The notes under the pieces were generated by a model. It was given only the letters and a program-made list of their open reading frames with translations. It did no database searches and was not told the DNA's origin. Of a stretch of DNA of 64,000 nucleotides, positions 39,822-53,100 are shown piece after piece. A program made the position numbers and the translations under genes. Position 1 is the first letter of the stretch. Each line of letters begins with the position of its first letter. Location of the stretch: contig OZ260667.1 in the NCBI GenBank assembly GCA_965285935.1, positions 23,188,001-23,252,000 on the forward strand. The letters are read 5' to 3'. This stretch comes from Ophelia neglecta (lineage: Eukaryota).

Positions 39822-42800
39822 TCATTGGAAACCGTCGTTAATGTACCCAGTTGGGAGCACACTTTTATCGGGAAAGAAACCCTTGGCTTTGAGTTCTATG
39901 TCTCTTGGATCAATGAGATTGTCTATTGACGGAATACGGACTCCTAGACCAACTCCTATTGGCTTACTTTCCTCTAGAACACGTGAAAACGTACCATACA
40001 TCAATGCCCGGTGAAAATGACACTCACCTCGAGCTCTGACCATGCCTTTCTTATAACGAACATGCATCTATCAGCCTTGACCAAATCTACAATTTACCTT
40101 CTAGGAACCCTTTTGGAATGTGAAAGTTTCGCATTTTTTGCTGGTTACGTTCTCCGCTTGTTCCCTTGCTACCCCTACCTTGTAATTGCGGTCAGGCCTT
40201 AAACCCTTCACCCGACTGGCCTCTCTTGCAGATCATTCGGAGATGTTCATGCATATCCTTGAAAATGGAAGAAAACATGCACAAAAACACGAAGACATTG
40301 AAAGCACACAAATTCTCTAGTGTACCAAGCCATGCACATTCAGCACAATCCAAATTCAGACAGAAAGAGTGGATCATATCTTCACATGCCGGCACATGGT
40401 TAAGGGCTAAAAAGGATGCAACAGCTTTGCAGATTCTACCCTGCCCACAGACGAACATCGAATATTTGCTAGCTAAGCAACCTACATCTAACACAATATT
40501 ACCAGTTTCACATTGGATGGTTACATAGCATTTCGCCCCTCATATTCACTGTCAAAGGAGGGATTGACCTCATACCGACCACTGACGACGGAGAGCGCAT
40601 GCTCAGAGGACACACGACGCTTACCTTGATGGAGAGAGAACCGGACATGCGTTTAAGGTTAGTTGACGGAAGCAGGTGTTACCAAATGGGAAACAGGAGA
40701 GCCTTTTGAAGTTAAGCTTCAAATAACAGTCTATATGTTGTGTAAACAAATTATAAAACAGGGCACAGCCTAGACATATATCAAAACAAAACACCGAACC
40801 ATAGGAATTTCGGTAAAACGATGATTTGTATTGGATTCTACTAGCATCGAGAGTTACTTCTTACAGTCATATGCCAAAATCGGGGTGTTCCAACTAACAA
40901 AGTAAGGAGATGGATCATATTTCGACCACACCGATTTCTGCTGGGTAGATAATGGACTATATCTGATCTGTTTAGTCGCTGTACATGTATTATGTATTCA
41001 ATTAAAGCACATGCGAAAAAGAGTATTTTATAACCAACCCAAAAATATGCACATGGAAGGGTAAAGATTTGAAAGATTGAAAAAAAGCATTTATGTTAGC
41101 ATAAAACAAATGATAATATTCACCAGATATATGCAATTAATGTCTGAAGTATACTGACTTACAGGAAATTAAATGTAATAAAGGCACTGCATAAATTTAT
41201 AGACATAAAACACTATATACATGACGAAATACAGAGCCACACAAAACAATCATGGGCCGTGACATAATTTACCTTGTTGAGGCCTTTCTGGGCCCCTTCT
41301 GTTGGGTACTGAATAAGCCACCTCTCCGTCTACACTATTAGTTGATGGCCCTCTGGAGGGATTTGCTTTGGGTGTCGTCATTAGTGCCATTTTGGGAACG
41401 AACACGAAAACAAGCACAACCGAAGCATTGATAGTTATGCCTACGCAAATGGCGGGATTTTGATAAATTGGACCGGCCAACATATACGCGCAAATCCAAC
41501 AGACTAAGATGATTATTGTTAGGAATGAAGTCATAGCTATGTACACCGCCTCTCTGTGAGTTTCTAGTGAATTGACAGATTTCAACGAGATTATGAGCGT
41601 CAGCAGCACCAAGAGGAACACATAAACTAATGACGTCACCAATGCGTTTTGTGTGTATGCGCAACGCCAGTTTATTGCGTATATTGGGTATTCGCCCTCT
41701 TCTTTGATATTGGTAAGGTACCAACGAACATCTGCTGGTTCTAGAATTAACCACTCGATCGAGATTATAAGTTGTATAAATATTAAAAGGAAGGCGAGGC
41801 AACACTGACTCGGACCCCCTATAAACGGAACTCTTCCACCCAAGCTCGCCCTGTTTGTCATTCGGTTTATACGAACTACTTTTATCAGGAGGCATGCGAA
41901 GACGACAGCGTAGAACGTTGCTAGGCCCAGCCTCCGGATACCACAGGTAGCATATGTGGACGAAATCATGAATGGGAAAATGAGCAAGTAGAGCAGGATG
42001 ATTCCAATGAGGAGCATGACGCTTAGGCTGCATGTGGCGGCCTCCACTACTGGATGTTTAAAGTTGAAAAGGAAGAACATCATGATGACGATAGCGAATA
42101 TGATTCCGAGAAGAGCTATTGTTAACACGATCACTCCCCAGACCTCACGATGGGCGGCCATTTCAACAGGAACGTTCTCTTTGTCCAGCAATGGCTAAAA
42201 CAAACATGAAACCTAAGTCACCAACTATTCTATTTGTAAGTGTAAAAGCAATTGCCTGTTGAACATTCTAATGCAAAATTCTGTTAATATCCAGTTTAGG
42301 AATGTCAATAGCTGTTAAATGTACAGGAAACTTATAATAGCTTAATACTCTTTCAGTTTCTCATGGGTATTCGTATATTACCTAACTTCCCACTATATCC
42401 GAAGTTCAAAATTTGACAAAACGTTTTGGATTCAACCGTTTGAGAAAGCATGAATTAGAGTATAGTTTAAATAGCATACCTGGCGTTGTGAACAGTTACA
42501 AGTACCCGGACACACTGATACGGGAAAGGCTAGCTTTCCGTCGCTGTTGTACATGCGCACTGATGACCTGTTTAGCTGTAGCCGCCCTGCATCCCAACGC
42601 CCAATCTGTAGTCAGATAAAAAGTTGCTACAGTCACAAGAGGGAGTACAATTTATGTTACCCCTCTGATTTATCGATGTTTGAATGATATATGTACAATA
42701 GGTTTTCAGAAAAACGGTGGCTGATTATAATTTAAGCATGCCTTTAAGCAAGTTGCTTGTAAACATATCATTGTAAGACGGATAGCCATTTACCAAAAAC

Positions 42801-45800
42801 GTATGTCACGTTGTATTCGATAACTAGATAATCGGACTAAACCATGTTCACGTGATTTGTATTAGTCTCTTCGTTATCAATGTGTTTACCTGCACAAAGC
42901 TTGTTGCGCCTTCCTTGATCTGAACATTAAAGATTCGAAATCTTCCAGGTCCACTTCCCTCCGGGCTGTATGAAAAATACATGCCGTCTGCTCCAGTCTG
43001 CACCCGTGCGTCCTTGATAAATTCCAATGTCATGTCTGCTTCATCTAAGCCTAAGGCATACATAAGACAGTTTAACTTAATAATAGGGGCATTTTTCTTT
43101 ACCTGCGCCCAATTTATATTCGGTAAAAAGTCATTCAGGACATTGCTTTGAACTGTTCAACATTTACTCAAAGGGCGATTGTTTCGCCCAAGCCTTTATC
43201 AACAGTGAAGGAAATCAGACGCATTCAAATCATTTTGTATTGCTAGTGATATACGAAACAAAACCTTTGGACAGAAAATGATTGTAGAAAAGATCCACTG
43301 TAGTTTCTTTTCTTACCAATGACTGCTATCAGATCATCAATGTTACACATATTTTTTTCTTGTTGAAAACTATAAACCACTACATACCCATCATACTGGG
43401 ACATGGTGGCAAGGTGAAAGCCCCGCAAAGTTGATCGAACATGTTCGTAAGTCCTTGGGCGTAGGAATACACAGCGTTGATTGTACTGATCACTGATTGG
43501 CGGTCACTAAACACGGCGTCTTTAAGACTTTCCTTGCCAGTGCAAGGGCGAGTGTAGCCACCATTGTAATCCACATTGCATTGGAAGTGGGTCTGCCAAA
43601 ATTCACGAAACCATGGGTTGTTTGGATCGCTCAACAAATTTTGTTTCTGCATGAAGGCATCGAATTTCGGGTTCGATGTTACGTCTGGAGCTACTAATAA
43701 AGCTCCTTTCAGCACATCCAAATATGGATTAATTTTTTCCCGCTCATGTGCCCACGTGTCAAACCCAAGCCAAACAAGGCGACCGACCACATCCTTGTGA
43801 GTTGCCACCTGCAGACGCCGAAGAACAACACTTGTTCAGAATTATTTAAATCAATGGAAGAATATATCTAAATTCAATTAGATGCCAACACCACATGAGA
43901 TGGCTTTATGTTGTGGCTTTTTCTTCGACCTTCGAAATAAATCGAAGTAACTAACCTGCAATAAATGACCAATGCCCTGTGGGTCAGCGAGTAATACCAC
44001 TCCTATCGCGCCTTTGGTCTGCAGAAGTGTATCAATCACGTCTTTATATTGGTCAGGCCCGCTCGGCGTCTCATTGATGGATAATGATACGGCAATACAA
44101 ACACCACTGTCCTCCAGTGCTGATCTTATAATACACAATGTTAGGTGTTTACTTATATGACATATGCTTATAACAAACGACATGCATGGGTGATATATAA
44201 TTTTATAACATAGTATCCCCCTTAATTGACACTACATATATACCGAAGGAGAGGTTCCATCATTCGAGCACGTTTGCTGTCAGATACCACTAGCGACAAA
44301 TAGGTCCATCCCAAGGCTTTTACTGCCGCCACCAGACAGCGTGCCTCTGTGTCTTCTGCTGCAGCCGTGCGCAGAAGAAATGGGTACTTTTTAACATCCA
44401 TGGTGCGGGATCCTGGAGTTACCTGATAATAAAAAACATCAAATTGATGCAATGCAAACTCGATACTGGGACTACATTTTTTTGCTATTGAATCAATGAA
44501 GGATAATCGAGTAGTTTGCTGGTATTATCCCCCTGGCAGGATAATATTTGAATTACCTGCACCCATCGTCGTCCACGATAGTTCATTTTGTTAAGGTCAC
44601 TGGTAGTGTCACTCTCATATCCACCAATGAACGCCTGGACATAGGTCAAACGAGGAACTTGAGGACGCTGAGAAAATAAGCGTAGTTGGTCTCGTGATGC
44701 TGCAAAAACTGTTTGCGCCTGCTTTGTGTCTGAACAAGTGTCAAAAGCCATATAACCAAGTCGTAGCTCCGGCAGTAGAGCGGTGCTGTTGTTGACTTGG
44801 TCGATGGCATACTTGAAAGCCATAAAGTCAAGAAAACCCATATCGCTGCGATATTGTGCACATAGGGAGCCCGATTCACTTTGCTGATGAATGGGGAAGA
44901 AACCCATGAGGGTAAGCTGTTCGTATTGTAGTTGGAATTTGAGATCGGCGATGGTCATGTTAGTACATAAACAGTCAACACACTGGGAAGAGACCTGCGT
45001 ACTCGGAATGGGGTCACCTGACGAGTCCAGGAATGCATACAGGTCCTTCACCCGCAAAAGTAGGATTTCCTTCACCCATGTCCCTACCTATAGAAAAAAT
45101 GCTCACTTCATTGTTTATTCCCGGAAAGTTTGTTCCCAAGATACTGCATACTATTTTTTACTGAAAACGATGGCTGTCCTCAGTCACGATCGATATTATT
45201 ATAGCATAAAGGCAAATCAAAGCATATTGCATATTTGTGCAATGGAAGCAGGGATCGAATATACTTGTTAAATCAGATGTGTGATTTTTGTCCAGACCAA
45301 CTCACCAGAGTGTATTTGAGCTTGAAAGTTTTGTCTCTGCGGAAATTGTACACATTATAACGAGGAATGCCATTTCCCAGAACATCGAATGTAACATTGA
45401 GACCCGTAATACTGTTATGGAAGTCAGATATCTCCATATAGTCGTATAAAGATACCATATTATGCTGTGCCTCGCTGCAGATTGGAAAGGTGATCTCCTG
45501 GCAGTAATCTACACAAGGGTGAAATATACCACGGTAATATATCACGGTTTCTAAACATCCCAGAAAATGAGATAAAAACCAATAAGGTGATGTTGCGACG
45601 TGCTTAATTATTTACTATTAGTACTAGTGACCCCTAGGCCATGGGGGGCGTCAAACCAGTCAGACCAAAGTTACCTATTATCATGTTATGGAGGGCTACC
45701 ACAGCAGCATAGACAGCGTCGATGACGTAAGGGACCTGATCGGCCATTTTGATGTCTTGGGTTTGTAGTGAAAGTCTTTGTCCCGGAGCTTGTTGGCATC

Positions 45801-48800
45801 TGGTGATAGATAAGATGACAGTATTAAATAGAAAAGCGCATACATTTTGTATTTTTGTTATCGATATACGCACAAACATCTAAAACAGTTTCAGTCGAGG
45901 AGCTTGGTTCCGGAAACCTACGGGTTTGGATATTCCTGACGTAGCGCGTTGTCAATATGACATTCGAAATGACGCTGCCAGTATTCAGCAAACCAGGGAT
46001 TGCGTCGTGTGTCCTGAGGATGAATATTCCGAAAGTAGGTCATAAAGGGTTTCACTTCCTCCGCATAGAAGCCTAGCGTAATGGCACCCTCGGCAACATT
46101 TTCAATGTCTTTGACTACCTAAAAAAAAGCCATATTTTTTCAGAACGTATATTTGTGGTGCAGGGCCATAACTCTCATTTACTTTCCCTGATTCTTACCT
46201 GTGCCCTTGAACCCCAATAATCCGAGGCTACCCACACAATGCTGTTTGTTCTTCCTGCTAGGGTACGTTTCATGGCTGCCAGAAGTTCCCTAGCGTCTGT
46301 GTCTGTCGTAAGTAGAACGACAACACTGGCATTTTGAAGTCCTCTGATTAGGTAATACTTAGCTACATTGTTCATTGCCTCTCGATCCCGGGCAAAATAG
46401 TCCTCTAGGGGAACCTAAGGCGGAATAATAGGTAAATCCAACTAACAAAAGCATTAAGAAGGTTTTATTATTGATAACTTTACATTTATAAAACAAATGA
46501 GACCACGCGTTATTTTTTTTATTGCGAAATGTATATAACTATAATATCTAATTATATATAAAATTGTTACCTGAGTAGAGACACAAATTTTTTCTTCTTC
46601 AGCGACGGTCATGAATTCTCTGAAGGCCGCCTTGCCATATACATTATTTGAGTAAACCGCGGCAACGGTTCGCCAATTATACTGAATCAAAATATCAACG
46701 ATAGCACGTGCCTGCGCACTGTCACTTCCAACCGTTCGAAGGAAATAGGGGTATTTCTTTCTGTCCGACAGTTCAGCATTAGTTGCTCCATAACTCACTT
46801 GTGGAATCTAGAAATACAACAAAACTCACTTCTATCACAGCAGGTATTGACGCAAAGTCTATACAAGGAAGATATTATTCAGGACTGTTAATTGCTTTGC
46901 ACATTAAATCTTTGGGGTTTGTCAATGTATATATTAACCTTGTGGCTTGTGAGGAGCTCAGCTAGGGCCATGGTGACGTCACTACTAGCTCCACCAATGA
47001 CAACGTTCGGAGACATGGGTTTCCTATTCTGGTCAGCAATGATCATTTCCTTGTTAAGAATTTCCTTTACTTGTCTAGCAGCTCTTGCAGGATTCCTGCA
47101 ACTGTCCAGAGCAACGCCAGTCAACTTGATTCCGGGAAGGATAGCCGAGTCTAGATTGATTTGATCTATAGCAAAGTAGAATGCTTCCAATGCCTGAATA
47201 GCATTAGAGTCGATATCGGTAAAGTCGCACTCTTTACCGAAAGCACCCGAACTGTGAATATCAAATATTCCAGGTATCATGATATCTCCAGGCAAGTCCA
47301 TTCCGTAACTGAAATATGTAGATCAATTGCTGTGAAATGTGATGACATAAGAAGTTGTCTGGAGACGTTAGAAAACGTACATTTCTTGTAATTCCTTTAC
47401 CTATTGTCAAACTTGCTGTTGGCGCAGGAACAAACCACATTACATTGTGAGGGAGGAACGATGTTCAGTGGAATGCCCTCCCTATCATAAAACGTGATGG
47501 GACTCTGGCCAGTCAGATCCAAGCCATTGGTGCTTGTCCATTTACCAACCTATGAAACAACATAACATGTATTAATATGTTGCCTTGCTTATGGTAAACT
47601 GTTCATAACTTTTCACCTATCAGATCGTAGTACATATATATTTATTGGGACAGCTTGATAATAATTCACCTGTTTCATAAGGTACGATGTCCCATCCATC
47701 TGTACATTCATGATAGCATACTTTGCTGTCTCAAGATCCCCATTCGCACCAAAAGAAATAAATTCCTGTTTAATAAAGAAAAACCGGCTTTTGATAGTCA
47801 GCTGCGCAATGTTAATAAAGGGAAAATTAACTAATATAAACAATAACGAATAAGTACATAAAGTATAATTGTAGTTTGATTGCCTGATCTTTGGTGACGA
47901 ACTCTGTCTGTTTCATATAGCTAACGAGTTCCTGCGCAGTGACAGCTCCCAGTGCATTGCAGGTGCCGGAAGTTCCTGCCTTACATAAATTGTAATGAGC
48001 ACTTTTCATGGCATATCCATAAGCCTCTACCGCCGCTATCACTTGAGATACTTCGATTCCCTGTTTATAATGCTGAGCATGATCAGTCTTTGATCCAGTA
48101 GTACATGTTTGGTACAAAGTACAGTTATTGACTTGTTCCCAATAATCAGGAAACCATGGATTCCTCTGATAACTGAAGGGGTCTAGGCTAAGAAAGTAGT
48201 TCCGGAACTCAGCCATATCCCCACTGTATTCCTCCACGGCGATAAGGCCACGAATGAACTGAGAAACGTTTGGTGATTCATATTTCCAGCTGTCCCGAAA
48301 TGGATGTGCAAGTAACCATTGTAAGTCGGCTATTTTTTCATAACGGGAAGAATAGAAGTCTAGCGTCCGAAAAAGGTTTTCTGTGATGCCTGGTAAAGTC
48401 AACAGGATCACCCCACGGACACCTGCGAGAGAGAGTTAAAACCAGCCTTCACAAAGAAGGAATTTTGTTTTCAGATGGTACTGTATTATTAAACAATATA
48501 AAATGGTATTTTTAAACACTCCAACAACTAAGGCACACTGATATATTTGTGGTTTACCTGTGTTATGTACTTCCACGAGTTCTGCTACCGTCTTGTCGTA
48601 AAAAGACCCGGCCATGTCTATTTTGATGACCGGGGTAAGGCAGATATCTTCTCCGCCCGCCAATCGGTGTAATTCTGATAAAAGATCTGCAGCGTCCGGG
48701 TCATCGCCGGCAACCACTGCTACATCGTACCAGCCAAGCTCCCGTAGAATGTCTATCAATACCTACAATATAATAACACATATAATGATAATTGAAGATT

Positions 48801-50139
48801 GGATGCGTGCCGGCTATAGAACTTTTCATCACTTTACGGCAGCCGATGATGTAAATTCCTTCTGGTACGAAAGGCTAGAAAAAGAATTTGTTGTTGTTTA
48901 TTTATTCCTCTTGTTTATCGATGTATAGCTTATAGATAAAATTTAGTGCTAACCCTGGCAATGATCTTCCCTTCTGGTATTGTCCTTAAGAGGTACGGAT
49001 ATGTCTCCTTGTCACTGAGGTCAGATACACGCGCGCTGTAGATAATTTGCGTCACATGAGCAGAACTAAACAAAGAAGCAACCTTTAAAGCTTCTTCGCT
49101 GTAGTATGGTCCAACAGAACCTACAATAACAATGCGGTGTTATGATTATATGTACATTTGAAGCTAAACTAGCCGTCAAACTAAACCAAGCCTCATAAAC
49201 CGTGTTTGGTGTGTTAGACCAATAAAATAATTGTCATTGTCATTGTTAAAAAACAGAATAAATTAATCGCTGGAGTAACCTACCGACAAAGGCCGGCCAG
49301 TAGTTACATTGGTTGTTCTGCCCGGCTTGTGATGCTTCTCGTCTTGCGAGGTAGTTCAGAGCCCTTTTCCCAGCTACTTCGCTACGTCCACAAGTGTCGT
49401 ATACCAGGGCCCCTGGTAAATAACATTAAATCACTTAAACTGTAAAAAGGACCTTAGGGAGGGGCAGGGGATTTACAACCTTTTTCCAGGAATATTTCAA
49501 CGTTATTACTATGAACGTCATCTCTCTTATGAGCTATATATGAGCATACTGTGGTTCTTTTGATATATAAATGTAAAATGATCGAAAAAACTGGTTAAAT
49601 TTGGTTGAGTTTTGGTTAAATTTGACAAACATCAATGAATTTGACAAAATTAATATCAACAACATATGCAGTCTCGCGTTAAGACCGTCAAACTTTCTAA
49701 ATATCAGTGTTTAAAGAAAATATATAATTGAACACTAATTCTGGTGTAGAATATATATTCGTTAATGTATGTAGGGGGTTAGGGGACACTATGGAGCATG
49801 GTGTAAATAAGTTGTTTTAAATTCTTTTTACGATAATAATATATCTTCAATTATATATAAAGTGTAGACGAGGTTATTACCAAAAGTGACTCCCGGGACA
49901 AAGTCCAATGCATTGAGATTGTCAATGGTAAAAAGAAAGGCCTCCATCCTCTGTATGGCGTCCGGGTTGATAGTTGACCCACACTCCTGGCCAAGCGGCC
50001 CCGGTTCATGTATGTTAAAAAATCCTCCTAGCACCAGATTACCGGGTACATTTACAAATGGGGCTTGAGGGCATGACTGGGAATAAGTTAGGCTGGGTAA
50101 ATATAGGAACAGGACCAGAAAAGGCATAGCAGCTGACAT
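39822..50139 (-). CDS. Class C (metabotropic glutamate receptor-like) GPCR with three tandem VFT/ANF_receptor domains and one 7TM, about 1850 aa
   Basis: Phase-consistent exons (minus strand): 50139-49881, 49412-49284, 49120-48954, 48762-48558, 48422-47884, 47765-47670, 47549-47401, 47308-46939, 46807-46571, 46414-46199, 46118-45922, 45799-45675, 45508-45306, 45087-44557, 44422-44244, 44124-43956, 43808-43388, 43050-42890, 42605-42480, 42194-41273, 39973-39822 (5553 nt). One signal peptide (MSAAMPFLVLFLYLPSLTYS). The class C motifs G.F.IH, AF..ID..N, D[TS]C, YP..LRT, GW/NW, NPWF..W and G.W each occur three times. The terminal exon choice is uncertain. Confidence 0.9.
41273..42194 (-). other. 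Class C 7TM domain (7tm_3) exon
   Basis: Seven hydrophobic segments with class C motifs: PVVEA, CGIRR, LLIKVVRINR, REAVYIAMT, FVPKM. Confidence 0.92.
42480..44964 (-). other. GPCR VFT domain 3 and 3-Cys linker (SVCPGTCNC)
   Basis: LMGFFPIH, AFKYAIDQVN, FDTC, FIGGYES, KYPFLLRT, LGWTY, NPWFREFW, INAVYSYA, IGRW. Confidence 0.85.
44965..47308 (-). other. GPCR VFT domain 2 and 3-Cys linker (SQCVDCLC)
   Basis: PGDIMIPGIFDIH, EAFYFAIDQIN, LDSC, IGGASS, IPQVSYGAT, LSDRKKYPYFLRT, YG, ASDYWG, RNPWFAEYW, VIDAVYA, VGTW. Confidence 0.9.
47401..50139 (-). other. GPCR signal peptide, VFT domain 1 and 3-Cys linker (SQCNVVCSC)
   Basis: PGNLVLGGFFNIH, IQRMEAF, YDTC, GPYYS, LSDKETYPYLLRT, RNPWFPDYW, FGANGD, VGKW. 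Confidence 0.85.
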
Positions 50140-53100
50140 CTGTAAAATAATCAAACATCGTGACGGAACATTGGCCATGGGAGAATCATTTACAAAATAT
50201 CAGCTGTAATTGAACAACTAGTATCACATCAGTTTATTATACAGCGCATGTGTGCATTAGGAGTTTCGATAACATTACTAATTTCGCTTTACATGTGTTC
50301 ATATATACACTATACTGAATTTTCTAAATTGAAACATGTTTGACTGCGAAAACGCTGAAGTATTACAAATAAGAGATATGCAACCTAAGGCATAAATAAT
50401 GTAATATATTTATGATAATAATGTGCATGAAAAACACCAGTCCATTATCATATTTTGCCTAAGTTTGCCATGGACATTAAGTCAGACCATGGACTATTAA
50501 TATGTCATGGTTACTTTCTCAAAATCCCAGGGAAGAAACATCTGGATGTAGATATTGTAAAATACTACACTGGTCACATTGTTTTTGCCATTTATTCCCT
50601 CGAGAATAAGGGTCTGTGAGTAGGGTAGTGAATTACTAGCATGAGCCATGTGGTATCAACTGATAGCAGACAAAGTATACCTGCATGCAGGTTGTGACCG
50701 AGTATGAATCACCTGGCGCTCGGCACCTGGAACTGATCAGAAAAACCTAATGATATTCGCTCCATTGATTTTGGTCTCGAGAGGGAAGTGAATCATGAAG
50801 AAATGCCTGGCTGCACTGTTCGGTTCTGGTCAATGATGCGCGGTTTTATGCATAATTCATTAGATTAACAATGAAATGTAAAAGTTAAGGCTTACTCCTG
50901 GTTTAAGGCGAAAATTGAAGCTGGAGGTTAAACTGAAAACGCAGGCCGATCACAGCAGTATTGAAGAAATCGAATAGAAGATCACAGTCTTCACCTCCAG
51001 TGAATAAAACAAGCTAATATCTATTTCACAGTCCACCGTATTTTAATAAGTTCATTGTCCGAGTATCGTCCAAATGGACATCCTGGTCCCCGCAAGGCAT
51101 TTGCAGTAAACTAGCAAACAGGTATAGGTGTGAAACATGACGGGTGCCAGTACATATAGTACATAGCATCATACTTATTAGAGCATATAAACCTGTCTCT
51201 CCCGTAACCCATCCGCATCTTATATGTAAATGTTTATTTTCAATTATAATATATTGTTCCCCAGGCGCCTTAAATAGACTTCCTTTTTTTACTTTAGTCA
51301 TTAACAAAAATCCTAGCGGGGTGAGCCCACTTAGCTAGACGTTACATTACTTAATAATTGCATTTTCATGTTTTTAAATCACCGCGATTCCGACTCTTCA
51401 TCTCAAGATATTACCGACATATAATATTTTCGCAAAGACTTGAAAATATTTAAGTCTAGTCCAAAAAAATAGTATAAAATTTTTATGCAGTATTATATAC
51501 ACTTTTGACATCGCAAAATTTTCACCTGCACTGATTTGTCATTATTTTATGCCCTGGGCTATATGGAGTCCCAATTATATATAATGTCTGCATTTGACAT
51601 TGAACACATAAACTCGAACAGACGCGTATACATAGTAAATATACACAAATATCGTGTATTACTGTGGCAGATAAAGACTATTCGCAAAATGGATCTGTTC
51701 CCAGACTTTGGAGCCCACGCCACAGGGAGGTGACACACTCGTACCAATTGCTATTGAAAAATGATAAATCATTTGTAAAATGATTGTCTAAGTTGTGATC
51801 TCACAATTGAACGTCTTTGCTGTCAGATGGTTGGAATTATGGTAAATCTTGTGGAGTGTCCCTTGTGACATTTTCATGCTAATAATGGTTTACATTGTCA
51901 GATTTAAATGGATAAACGTTCACACTGCCAAGACTCTTTGTATAAAATGACTGATGGCCAATTTGAACTTCGTATATGGTCAACATAGCGCCCTGTTGTA
52001 AGCTGTTTGTATACTTTTAATACGAGATCTTTTCTCCTTTGAAGTCAAATATAAGGAAAACATTTCGGGTTCAATATGCTGTATAAATTGAATTATTTTT
52101 CGGTAAATCCAAAGGGTTTTATTTGGTCAACAACGATAAAAAACAAGGAACCTTTGTCAATATGTTAAGTCATAAGGGTATGTTAAAATAAGCATTTCTC
52201 CTCTCATGGGTGGAATGATATCTTTGAGAGTATAGACTTGGGTTTCATTCAAATAACTGCATATCCCAAGTAAAGTGACTTTAACTATATTGTTTGGTTG
52301 AATAACTTAATTTCTGTCTGAAAATGAATATTGTTATACATACATGTATACAGAAAAAAACGGAATAGGAGCATATCAAAAATAAATCAACCTAGTCAAG
52401 AAATATCGTCATATTACACTTGGACCTCGAAGTAGCACAGTTTCTTGCAAATCTATCCGTTTCTGGTTACTTTGTCGGCATATATTTTCTTGGAATATTC
52501 ATCAGTTAAATTTGAAAAGTTGAATCCTTGAAACAGAAGACTCTGATAAACAGTTCTTACCTTTAAATATGTATGAACAATATGAAGTCCTTCGATCGTG
52601 GTGAATTTTCCTTAACTAAGAGTGAAATTCTTCTCCCCTTTCCATATGTGAACGCCATGCAGCACAGCAGCTCCGTGAAGCAATAATGAGGTTTTTAAAG
52701 GCTAAGGTGCGTCTCTACTGCGCCAGTAATGTATAGAGCGAAGGTATCCAGCAGCAACAGGTGTAGAAGGAGATCCCATTCAAGAAGGTCACGATTTCAA
52801 AGCTCAAATAACCCCAGTTAAACCAATCCCATAATGGCACATTCTCTGGCTTTCAAGTTGAAATCAAACACTCAGCTAAGCTTTGATACTCTGTGCAGCA
52901 AGTATTGTTCTTGGGTTCAATTATGAATTTAAGCGTCTGCTGGGATTTCAATTTTCTTCAAATTGACAATATGCTAAATGGGTCACACTTTCGTTACATT
53001 TTAATGTAAATAGTAGGTGCGTAATTGAAATGCAAGTTATACTACAGCTTATGTAAGTAATACTACACGCACTCTTAAACGTAAACGTTTCATGAAATTG

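What the first reader, a model, noticed from the sequence alone, without database searches (positions are those of the whole stretch)
44965..47308. Only the middle flytrap keeps the amino-acid-binding pocket, and it lacks the glutamate-specific residues
Motifs were aligned by eye to mGluR1 residues. VFT2 keeps the alpha-amino-acid set: S165 (GGASS), T188 (YGAT), D208 (VGSD), Y236 (NVYG) and D318 (ASDYW). It has Ala at R78 (IQALE) and Gln at K409 (DQVPY), the distal-carboxylate contacts. VFT1 keeps R78 (IQRME) and S165 but has Arg at T188 (YSAR) and loses the D208, Y236 and D318 equivalents. VFT3 keeps S165 and D318 (GFDTW) but has Arg near T188 and no Y236. Inference: VFT2 binds a non-glutamate amino acid, while VFT1 and VFT3 bind other, possibly anionic, ligands or are structural. 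The probable sensor would then not be the domain next to the 7TM.
Basis: partly seen in the sequence, partly recalled or inferred. Interest (0 to 1): 0.75.

Follow-up and report, generated by a model that had tools for sequence, protein, structure and literature searches.

The report
Only middle flytrap keeps amino-acid pocket
An invertebrate receptor gene places three ligand-catching "flytrap" domains in front of one membrane domain, and only the middle one still has the residues that hold an amino acid, so the likely sensor would have to signal through a neighbour that lacks them.

Summary
The stretch 47308-44965 (minus strand) encodes the second of three complete Venus-flytrap (VFT) domains, plus a 3-Cys mini-linker. 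It belongs to a roughly 20-exon, roughly 1,800-residue class C GPCR gene (50178-41250).

- VFT2: S165, T188, D208, Y236, D318, with A78 and Q409.
- VFT1: only R78 and S165.
- VFT3: S165, E208, D318, with G188 and R236.

One position is ambiguous, the D318 equivalent in VFT1.

All three VFTs keep the structural cysteines. Exons carry fewer variants than introns.

I compared 18 predicted multi-VFT class C receptors from hemichordates, echinoderms, amphioxus, molluscs and arthropods. Nine have no canonical pocket, eight have exactly one and one has two. The canonical pocket is often not next to the membrane. None of the seven strict pockets has R78 plus K409.

The reading "VFT2 is a non-glutamate amino-acid sensor" is therefore plausible and has the insect receptor DmXR as a precedent, but it is untested. 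"Anionic ligand" does not fit VFT3, whose pocket positions are strongly acidic. No RNA run was available. The spliced protein was not joined, so nothing was folded or docked.

The parts
41250..50178 (-). Whole gene: signal peptide, VFT1, linker 1, VFT2, linker 2, VFT3, linker 3, 7TM. About 20 exons and about 1,813 codons under my exon model.
   Evidence: Profile hits are collinear and cover model positions 6-452, 10-450 and 13-468. 19 of 19 junctions have phase-compatible GT-AG pairs. 7tm_3 scores E 4.9e-42. tblastn with multi-VFT proteins hits only 41277-50193.
47652..50178 (-). VFT1, in exons at about 50178-49881, 49412-49308, 49120-48954, 48762-48558, 48422-47899 and 47765/47787-47670. Pocket codons: R78 49948-49950, S165 49098-49100, R188 49029-49031, G208 48969-48971, D236 48694-48696, H318 48304-48306, E409 48052-48054.
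   Evidence: Summed profile score 268.6 bits, added by me.
47401..47549 (-). Linker 1: VGKW, about 30 residues, then SQCNVVCSC (3 Cys).
   Evidence: No Pfam family at E<=1, so no NCD3G match.
45306..47308 (-). VFT2, the finding. Exons 47308-46939, 46807-46571, 46414-46199, 46118-45922, 45799-45675 and 45508-45306.
   Evidence: Splice sites read and recovered by the script. Summed profile score 369.9 bits, the highest of the three VFTs.
47191..47193 (-). VFT2 Ala at the mGluR1 R78 column (IQALE).
46981..46983 (-). VFT2 Ser at the S165 column (GGASS).
46781..46783 (-). VFT2 Thr at the T188 column (YGAT).
46721..46723 (-). VFT2 Asp at the D208 column (VGSD).
46637..46639 (-). VFT2 Tyr at the Y236 column (NVYG).
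46220..46222 (-). VFT2 Asp at the D318 column (ASDYW).
45736..45738 (-). VFT2 Gln at the K409 column (DQVPY).
44965..45087 (-). Linker 2 (VGTW ... SQCVDCLC). It lies in the same open exon that continues into lobe 1 of VFT3.
   Evidence: One search shows one 200-residue open piece, 45087-44488. No Pfam family.
42869..44964 (-). VFT3, in exons at about 45087-44601/44557, 44484/44458-44244, 44124-43956, 43808-43388 and 43050-42890. Pocket codons: D78 44827-44829, S165 44611-44613, G188 44411-44413, E208 44354-44356, R236 44270-44272, D318 43758-43760, S409 43494-43496.
   Evidence: Summed profile score 295.4 bits. The boundary between exons 14 and 15 is uncertain (see noticed in passing).
42480..42605 (-). 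Linker 3: IGRW ... SVCPGTCNC (3 Cys).
41250..42194 (-). 7TM domain and a short C-terminal tail in one exon.
   Evidence: PF00003 7tm_3, 144.8 bits, profile positions 4-251 of 251.

Best explanation
The stretch encodes the middle ligand-binding module of a single-chain class C GPCR made of three serial units. Each unit is one Venus flytrap followed by a 3-Cys mini-linker, and the three units sit on one 7TM domain.

Shown: VFT2 is the only flytrap with the complete alpha-amino-acid signature (S165, T188, D208, Y236, D318). It lacks the two residues that hold glutamate's distal carboxylate (R78 to Ala, K409 to Gln).

Inferred:
- VFT2 closes on an L-alpha-amino acid or a close derivative other than glutamate.
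- The movement is passed down helix F, which runs from Y236 at its top to the conserved Cys at the 254 column at its base. It then goes into the cysteine linker, through VFT3, which cannot hold an amino acid in the canonical way, and on to the 7TM. The receptor probably works as a dimer.
- VFT1 and VFT3 are folded modules under constraint. They act as relay or allosteric partners, in the way the non-binding subunit of a class C heterodimer does, but in cis. They may bind something other than an amino acid; for VFT3 a cation is more likely than an anion.
For: - Pocket table from the profile alignment, with high posteriors, and independent alignments to solved chains.
- VFT2 is the most canonical flytrap: 369.9 bits against 268.6 and 295.4, and 30.9% identity to mGluR1 against 26.4% and 25.9%.
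- All three VFTs keep the Cys at columns 67, 109, 254, 378, 432 and 439. Each is followed by a 3-Cys linker.
- In mGluR2, Cys234 at the base of helix F is disulfide-bonded to CRD Cys518, and Tyr216 at the top of that helix packs on the ligand (PMC12394075, passages read).
- Rule and precedent: the five-residue rule and the role of K409 (PMC2680970, passages). DmXR keeps the proximal residues and loses the distal ones, is not activated by glutamate, and its Thr-176 mutant is not activated by L-canavanine (PMC2695807, passages).
- Family survey of 18 multi-VFT receptors with 64 VFTs: 7 are strict 5/5 and 10 are loose 5/5. Nine receptors have none, eight have one and one has two. 0 of the 7 strict pockets has R78 plus K409.
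- One polypeptide: linker 2 and the start of VFT3 share one open exon, and 19 of 19 junctions are in phase.
- Constraint: 14 variants in 3,873 exonic bases against 18 in 2,127 non-exonic bases. Of the exonic ones, 8 are synonymous and 6 are not, and none falls in a pocket codon.
Against: - No binding, expression or splicing data. No RNA run holds the gene.
- The signature is necessary for known amino-acid-binding class C pockets, but its presence does not prove binding.
- VFT2 still has two Arg in the pocket columns (the W110 column and R323), so an acidic ligand is not excluded.
- Nine of 18 relatives have no canonical pocket at all, so this family can evidently work without one.
- No close orthologue was found. 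The best 7TM relative is a 230-residue fragment at 79% identity, and the best named one is at 41%. A search with VFT2 exon 2 found nothing. Conservation of these exact residues over short evolutionary distances is therefore untested.
- The variant counts are far too small to compare the three VFTs, and all three runs come from one sample.
- The linker disulfide is inferred from conserved cysteines only.
Confidence: 0.55

Rival explanations
1. Multi-input integrator. Each flytrap binds its own ligand: VFT2 an amino acid, and VFT1 and VFT3 non-amino-acid ligands such as ions or other small molecules. The receptor sums the inputs.
For: - VFT1 and VFT3 keep the fold cysteines and full-length domains.
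- VFT3's pocket columns are strikingly acidic, six acidic residues to one basic, as a cation site might be.
- VFT3 keeps S165, E208 and D318.
Against: - No ligand-specific signature is recognisable in VFT1 or VFT3.
- A T-to-K variant sits directly beside VFT3's D318, which hints at loose constraint there. This is a single observation.
- Non-binding partner flytraps are the known solution in class C heterodimers. The abstracts listed state that GABA binds GB1 while G proteins are activated through GB2.
Confidence: 0.22
2. VFT2 still senses glutamate or another acidic amino acid. The Arg at the W110 column and the conserved R323 would replace R78 and K409.
For: R at the 110 column and R323 are present with high posterior. 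Net charge of VFT2's pocket columns is 3 acidic to 2 basic, against 3 to 3 in the mGluR1 reference.
Against: - Both canonical distal contacts are gone, and Y74 is Asn.
- DmXR, with the same kind of loss, is not activated by glutamate (PMC2695807).
- 0 of 7 strict canonical pockets in multi-VFT relatives has R78 plus K409, against 8 of 26 in single-VFT receptors.
Confidence: 0.1
3. The signature in VFT2 is a slowly decaying relic, or the gene model is misleading because of alternative splicing, separate products or a pseudogene. The receptor would then not use VFT2 as an amino-acid sensor.
For: - Nine of 18 relatives have no canonical pocket.
- No RNA evidence.
- One exon boundary in VFT3 is unsettled.
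Against: - All profile-aligned pieces lie in open stop-to-stop frames, and all junctions are in phase.
- One exon carries linker 2 and the start of VFT3.
- Exon diversity is lower than intron diversity, and synonymous changes outnumber non-synonymous ones per site.
- The three VFTs are only 21-25% identical to each other, so the triplication is old. Five of five pocket residues would be unlikely to survive that long without selection.
Confidence: 0.1

Closest known systems
Metabotropic glutamate receptors (mGluR1-8), solved structures such as 1ewk, 4xaq and 3mq4
   Same: Best matches of every VFT exon among solved structures. A 7tm_3 domain. VFT2 has the same five proximal pocket residues and the helix-F Cys.
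   Different: Three flytraps in one chain instead of one. No nine-Cys NCD3G domain; a 3-Cys linker follows each VFT. No VFT has both R78 and K409.
DmXR / mangetout (insect mGluR-like receptor)
   Same: The proximal amino-acid-binding residues are kept and the distal carboxylate contacts are lost. It is not activated by glutamate, and the ligand is a non-glutamate amino acid (PMC2695807).
   Different: I know of no tandem flytraps in Drosophila DmXR; this is recalled and its sequence was not examined here. The ant protein named 'metabotropic glutamate receptor B' (P0057), which I take from memory to be of the same kind, has a single VFT hit in my profile search. No specific relationship to the window gene was seen.
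Predicted multi-VFT class C receptors in public proteomes
   Same: Examples: Saccoglossus XP_077864807.1 (3 VFTs) and XP_002735016.2 (4), Acanthaster XP_022103847.1, Lytechinus XP_063971536.1, Branchiostoma XP_035691717.1, Physella XP_059178375.1 (5) and Octopus XP_052832771.1. They have two to five VFTs before one 7tm_3 and usually at most one canonical pocket. Saccoglossus XP_002735016.2 and Acanthaster XP_022103847.1 also carry it in the next-to-last VFT.
   Different: Only 29-41% identity in the 7TM. One-to-one orthology of the window's VFTs was not resolved. In Saccoglossus XP_077864807.1 and in Octopus the canonical pocket is the membrane-proximal one; in Lytechinus and Physella it is the first.
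Class C heterodimers with a non-binding flytrap (GABA-B GB2; T1R3 is recalled)
   Same: A flytrap that does not bind the agonist is still needed to pass on the signal. The abstracts listed say that GABA binds GB1 and G proteins are activated through GB2.
   Different: There the two flytraps are on two subunits side by side. Here they are in series on one chain.
BvgS-type bacterial sensor kinases with tandem periplasmic flytraps
   Same: Serial VFTs with different roles. In BvgS the membrane-distal VFT1 is mobile and the membrane-proximal VFT2 is closed, and the conformation of the whole stack sets the output (PMC4352136, abstract read).
   Different: An unrelated output domain (a histidine kinase), a bacterial periplasmic-binding-protein type of flytrap and two domains, not three. 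This is an analogy only.

Membership tests
Class C (glutamate-family) GPCR | 7tm_3 heptahelical domain | tested here: met
   PF00003, E 4.9e-42, 144.8 bits (cut-off 33.5), profile positions 4-251 of 251.
Class C (glutamate-family) GPCR | Extracellular Venus flytrap (ANF_receptor fold) | tested here: met
   PF01094 hits on exons of all three VFTs. My VFT profile is covered at positions 6-452, 10-450 and 13-468.
mGluR / CaSR / T1R type of class C receptor | Nine-cysteine domain (NCD3G) between the flytrap and the 7TM | tested here: not met
   No Pfam family at E<=1 for any of the three linker pieces. Each linker has three Cys.
Alpha-amino-acid-binding flytrap (five proximal residues of the Acher-Bertrand motif, as restated in PMC2680970) | S165, T188, D208, Y236 and D318 equivalents in VFT2 | tested here: met
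   5 of 5, all with posterior 0.9 or higher. Confirmed against 1ewk_A and mGluR2.
Alpha-amino-acid-binding flytrap | The same five residues in VFT1 | tested here: not met
   1 of 5 (S165 only): R188, G208, D236, H318. The D318 column is ambiguous.
Alpha-amino-acid-binding flytrap | The same five residues in VFT3 | tested here: not met
   2 of 5 strict and 3 of 5 with conservative changes allowed: S165, G188, E208, R236, D318. Posteriors are 0.5-0.6 at columns 188 and 236.
Glutamate receptor in the strict sense | R78 and K409 equivalents that hold the distal carboxylate | tested here: not met
   VFT1 has R and E, VFT2 has A and Q, VFT3 has D and S.
Multi-VFT class C receptors (predicted, unnamed group) | Two or more complete flytraps in series before one 7tm_3 | tested here: met
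   Three complete VFTs. The architecture is shared with 18 database proteins.
Multi-VFT class C receptors | One-to-one orthology of each VFT with those of a named member | tested here: inconclusive
   Exon-wise best hits are scattered. Clade-profile sums: VFT1 is best with 'first VFTs' (213), VFT2 with single-VFT mGluRs (292) and VFT3 with the amphioxus group (228).
Any ligand-gated GPCR | Ligand binding and G-protein coupling | not testable with these tools
   No RNA run. No fold or docking, because the exons were not joined.

The most novel reading that the evidence does not exclude
Bilaterian invertebrates carry an old, unstudied branch of class C GPCRs built as a chain of flytrap-plus-mini-linker units. 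At most one unit, rarely two, keeps a working amino-acid pocket, and its place in the chain differs between lineages.

Such receptors would be 'heteromers in cis'. A non-glutamate amino-acid signal caught by one flytrap (here the middle one) is relayed mechanically through flytraps that cannot bind it, via a disulfide-stapled linker, to the 7TM. That would be a mode of class C activation not covered by current single-flytrap models.
Probability: 0.4. Interest if true: 0.75.

Novelty: new variant of a known kind. Interest (0 to 1): 0.55.

Why it matters
Current models of class C GPCR activation assume one flytrap per subunit. Its closure is thought to reorient a dimer and to be passed through a rigid cysteine-rich domain directly into the 7TM.

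A receptor whose only canonical pocket sits one whole flytrap away from the membrane asks how closure can be transmitted in series. It offers a natural test system for that question. It also gives a concrete handle, the VFT2 pocket, for finding the ligand of a receptor group that is widespread in marine invertebrates and annotated only as 'uncharacterized' or 'mGluR-like'.

Practically, it warns that 'metabotropic glutamate receptor-like' labels on these proteins are probably wrong about the ligand.

Tried and rejected
- Looking for this gene's own full-length protein or a close orthologue. The representative search with the 7TM exon gave only a 230-residue fragment at 79% identity, and the best named hit was at 41%. 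A word-indexed search with VFT2 exon 2 gave nothing. Short-range conservation of the pocket could therefore not be tested.
- RNA evidence for the transcript. None was found: three DNA-like runs from one sample only. Laying their contigs gave variants but no splice information.
- Placing the three VFTs on the domain tree. This was not done because it needs a joined sequence. The exon-wise substitutes were inconclusive. The FastTree of database domains was drawn without support values, so positional orthology is a tentative reading.
- Naming the organism. The genome's own mGluR1 orthologue is 58-60% identical to the Saccoglossus one and 55-58% to the Acanthaster one. That places it near neither, and I leave it open.
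- The idea that the gene belongs to a recent chemoreceptor expansion. Rejected: the 7TM has no close paralogue in the genome (8 matches at E<=1e-10, the next best at 31% identity).
- The idea that the three VFTs are recent copies. Rejected: 21-25% pairwise identity.
- Papers on multi-flytrap class C GPCRs. Five searches found none. The library holds open-access papers and preprints only, and supplements were not consulted, so a description elsewhere cannot be excluded.
- Sources that are recalled or only partly seen. Acher and Bertrand 2005 was seen only as an entry in the reference list of PMC2680970. The wider mGluR1 contact list (Y74, W110, S164, S186, E292, G293, R323) and the role of Cys140 are recalled from Kunishima et al. 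2000 and were not read here.
- Structure prediction, structural alignment to CaSR and GPRC6A, and docking of VFT2. Folding a distant homologue was judged not to bear on this gene's pocket.

Full report
**What is there.** Between 50178 and 41250 on the minus strand lies one multi-exon eukaryotic gene.
- The last exon is a complete class C heptahelical domain (PF00003, E 4.9e-42).
- Upstream exons give ANF_receptor hits.
- I built a flytrap profile by two rounds of HMMER from a Latimeria mGluR1 seed over about 165 fetched class C proteins. I ran it against every stop-to-stop piece of the minus strand.
- The hits are collinear and cover the model three times: positions 6-452 (50064-47652), 10-450 (47298-45297) and 13-468 (44922-42540).
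- Summed exon scores are 268.6, 369.9 and 295.4 bits (my addition values).
- A script found a phase-compatible GT-AG pair close to the aligned ends at 19 of 19 junctions. For VFT2 these are the sites I had read by eye.
- The first exon starts with a signal-peptide-like sequence.

**One chain.**
- The piece 45087-44488 is a single 200-residue open frame. It begins with the flytrap-closing 'VGTW' motif, runs through the linker 'SQCVDCLC' and continues into lobe 1 of VFT3. VFT2's tail and VFT3 are therefore on one exon.
- tblastn with an amphioxus three-flytrap protein chains its inter-flytrap linker to 47585-47400 and its next flytrap to 47289-46571.
- No RNA run holds the gene, so the transcript remains a model.
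- This is why there is no fold, no docking and no tree placement of the window's own flytraps.

**The pocket.**
- Numbering rests on P0252 (Latimeria mGluR1), which carries Y74, R78, S165, T188, D208, Y236, D318 and K409 at exactly those numbers. It also rests on 1ewk_A, where chain index + 32 lands on T188, D208 and Y236.
- hmmalign of the separate exon pieces gives:
  - VFT2: N74, A78, R110, S164, S165, G186, T188, D208, Y236, T292, D293, D318, R323, Q409.
  - VFT1: D74, R78, G110, Y164, S165, S186, R188, G208, D236, L292, P293, H318, S323, E409.
  - VFT3: M74, D78, S110, E164, S165, T186, G188, E208, R236, D292, P293, D318, E323, S409.
- Posteriors are 0.9 or higher except VFT1 G208 (0.7), VFT1 S323 (0.8), VFT3 T186 and G188 (0.6) and VFT3 R236 (0.5).
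- Pairwise phmmer alignments to solved chains agree for every position they cover.
- The pairwise alignment of VFT1 does not reach the D318 region. The profile puts His there, with 'RDSW' four residues later. This is the only assignment I regard as open.
- The rule behind the reading: five main residues hold the alpha-amino-acid part, S165 is the most conserved, and K409 marks glutamate. It is stated in PMC2680970 (passages read).

**Are VFT1 and VFT3 decaying?** No.
- The three flytraps are 21-25% identical to each other and 26-31% identical to mGluR1, so the triplication is old.
- All three still have Cys at reference columns 67, 109, 254, 378, 432 and 439. Cys394 is not aligned in VFT2.
- Only VFT1 has a Cys at column 140.
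- Each flytrap is followed by the same kind of linker: [VI]GxW, about 30 residues, then three Cys. None of the linkers matches NCD3G or any other Pfam family at E<=1.
- Contigs of three runs from one sample, laid on 43300-49299, differ from the window at 32 single letters and two indels.
- Under my exon model, 14 of the 32 lie in 3,873 exonic bases and 18 in 2,127 other bases. Of the 14, 8 are synonymous and 6 are not.
- None hits a pocket codon. One, a T-to-K change, is the residue right after VFT3's D318.
- The numbers support purifying selection on the gene as a whole. They are too small to rank the flytraps.

**Relatives.** The 7TM exon found 1,224 proteins at E<=0.001 among 1.84 billion representatives. 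No full-length protein of this gene was present. The best hit was a 230-residue fragment at 79% identity, and the best named hit was a Saccoglossus 'metabotropic glutamate receptor' at 41% whose cluster holds a 1,777-residue isoform.
- Many hits are very long. Pfam and my profile show two to five flytraps before one 7tm_3.
- The named ones come from Saccoglossus, Acanthaster, Antedon, Lytechinus, Branchiostoma, Physella, Babylonia, Bulinus, Argopecten, Mizuhopecten, Octopus, Procambarus and Centruroides. Most are labelled 'uncharacterized protein'.
- Across 18 such receptors with 64 flytraps that cover the pocket columns, 7 flytraps have the strict S-T-D-Y-D signature. Ten have it when S/T, D/E and Y/F/W are allowed.
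- Nine receptors have none, eight have exactly one and one (Argopecten) has two.
- Rows dropped before this count: cluster members and isoforms P0154-P0160; the Aedes protein P0163, whose two flytraps have identical motifs and may be an annotation artefact; and profile hits with three or more of the five columns gapped.
- Single-VFT receptors of the same search have the strict signature in 26 of 49 cases, 8 of them with R78 plus K409. None of the 7 strict pockets in multi-VFT receptors has that pair.
- The canonical flytrap is next-to-last in Acanthaster XP_022103847.1 and Saccoglossus XP_002735016.2, as in the window. It is first in Lytechinus, Physella and Babylonia, third from the membrane in one unnamed protein, and last in Saccoglossus XP_077864807.1 and Octopus.
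- A FastTree of these domains groups them largely by position in the chain (no support values). This would mean an old array with lineage-specific loss of pockets. I hold that loosely.
- The window's own flytraps could not be assigned to positional groups with confidence.

**Genome context.** The assembly has 762 Mb. The 7TM has no close paralogue: 8 matches at E<=1e-10, the next best at 31% identity. This is a single divergent gene, not one of a recent expansion.

**How it most likely works.**
- Shown: one canonical alpha-amino-acid pocket, in VFT2, without the glutamate-specific pair.
- Established elsewhere: DmXR, with the same pattern, is not activated by glutamate, responds to L-canavanine, and its Thr-176 mutant (the threonine conserved in all mGluRs) is not activated (PMC2695807). 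In mGluR2, helix F links the pocket tyrosine (Tyr216) to Cys234, which is disulfide-bonded to the cysteine-rich domain (PMC12394075).
- Inferred: VFT2 closes on a non-glutamate amino acid or derivative. Helix F and the conserved Cys at column 254 couple that to linker 2. VFT3, and by the same design linker 3, carries the movement to the 7TM. The equivalence of mGluR2 Cys234 and column 254 rests on the constant offset of 20 at T168/T188 and Y216/Y236, which I recall and did not read here.
- VFT1 and VFT3 would then be the in-cis counterparts of the non-binding flytrap of class C heterodimers (abstracts listed). BvgS is a bacterial analogue of stacked flytraps with unequal roles (PMC4352136, abstract).

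**Known or new.** The architecture is present in public proteomes but unnamed. Five full-text searches found no paper that describes class C receptors with several flytraps or analyses their pockets. The library is open-access only and supplements were closed, so a description elsewhere cannot be excluded. The pocket logic itself is textbook. I class the finding as a new variant of a known kind. The same scan has two other first-stage notes on this stretch, on the triple architecture and on the mini-linker. My results agree with both.

**Verdict.** Interest is moderate to good, 0.55. This is a clear, testable hypothesis on an unstudied receptor type that rests on sequence only.

Noticed in passing
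window 49413-49306 (VFT1 loop exon), compared with the same column in VFT2 and VFT3: Only VFT1 has a Cys at the column of mGluR1 Cys140. I recall that this cysteine makes the inter-subunit disulfide in mGluR1. If so, the dimer would be tied at the membrane-distal flytrap.
   Followed up: partly
window 48640-48642, 46583-46585 and 44097-44099, plus linkers 47549-47401, 45087-44965 and 42605-42480: All three flytraps keep the Cys at the mGluR1 254 column, which I take to be the equivalent of mGluR2 Cys234, the residue bonded to the cysteine-rich domain. Each is followed by a 3-Cys linker that looks like the first cysteines of that domain. The repeated unit is thus flytrap plus linker.
   Followed up: partly
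window 44472, within 44484-44244: One run's contig has a 2-base insertion behind 44472. That lies inside my first-choice exon 15, so the real acceptor is probably further on, with 44458 the next candidate. The boundary between exons 14 and 15 of VFT3 needs RNA data.
   Followed up: partly
window 43755-43757: A G-to-T variant in one run changes the residue right after VFT3's D318 equivalent from Thr to Lys. This is a pocket-edge polymorphism in a flytrap that lacks the canonical signature.
   Followed up: no
G000:C12:23260316-23261545 (-) and 23288731-23291323 (+), 8 to 39 kb beyond the window's end: Further class C-like flytrap and 7TM matches lie next to this gene on the same contig. They may form a small local cluster of divergent class C genes.
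   Followed up: no
G000:C5:54166572-54168632, C8:61139395-61141368, C12:19791810-19793777 and others: Several long open frames of 700-960 residues match an mGluR1 query from the flytrap into the 7TM at 30-35% identity. These are intron-poor class C-like genes elsewhere in the genome.
   Followed up: no
protein P0163 (Aedes albopictus 'metabotropic glutamate receptor 1', 1,427 aa): It shows two flytrap hits with identical pocket motifs, including R78 and K409. This looks like an annotation or assembly duplication, not a true tandem receptor. I left it out of the survey.
   Followed up: no
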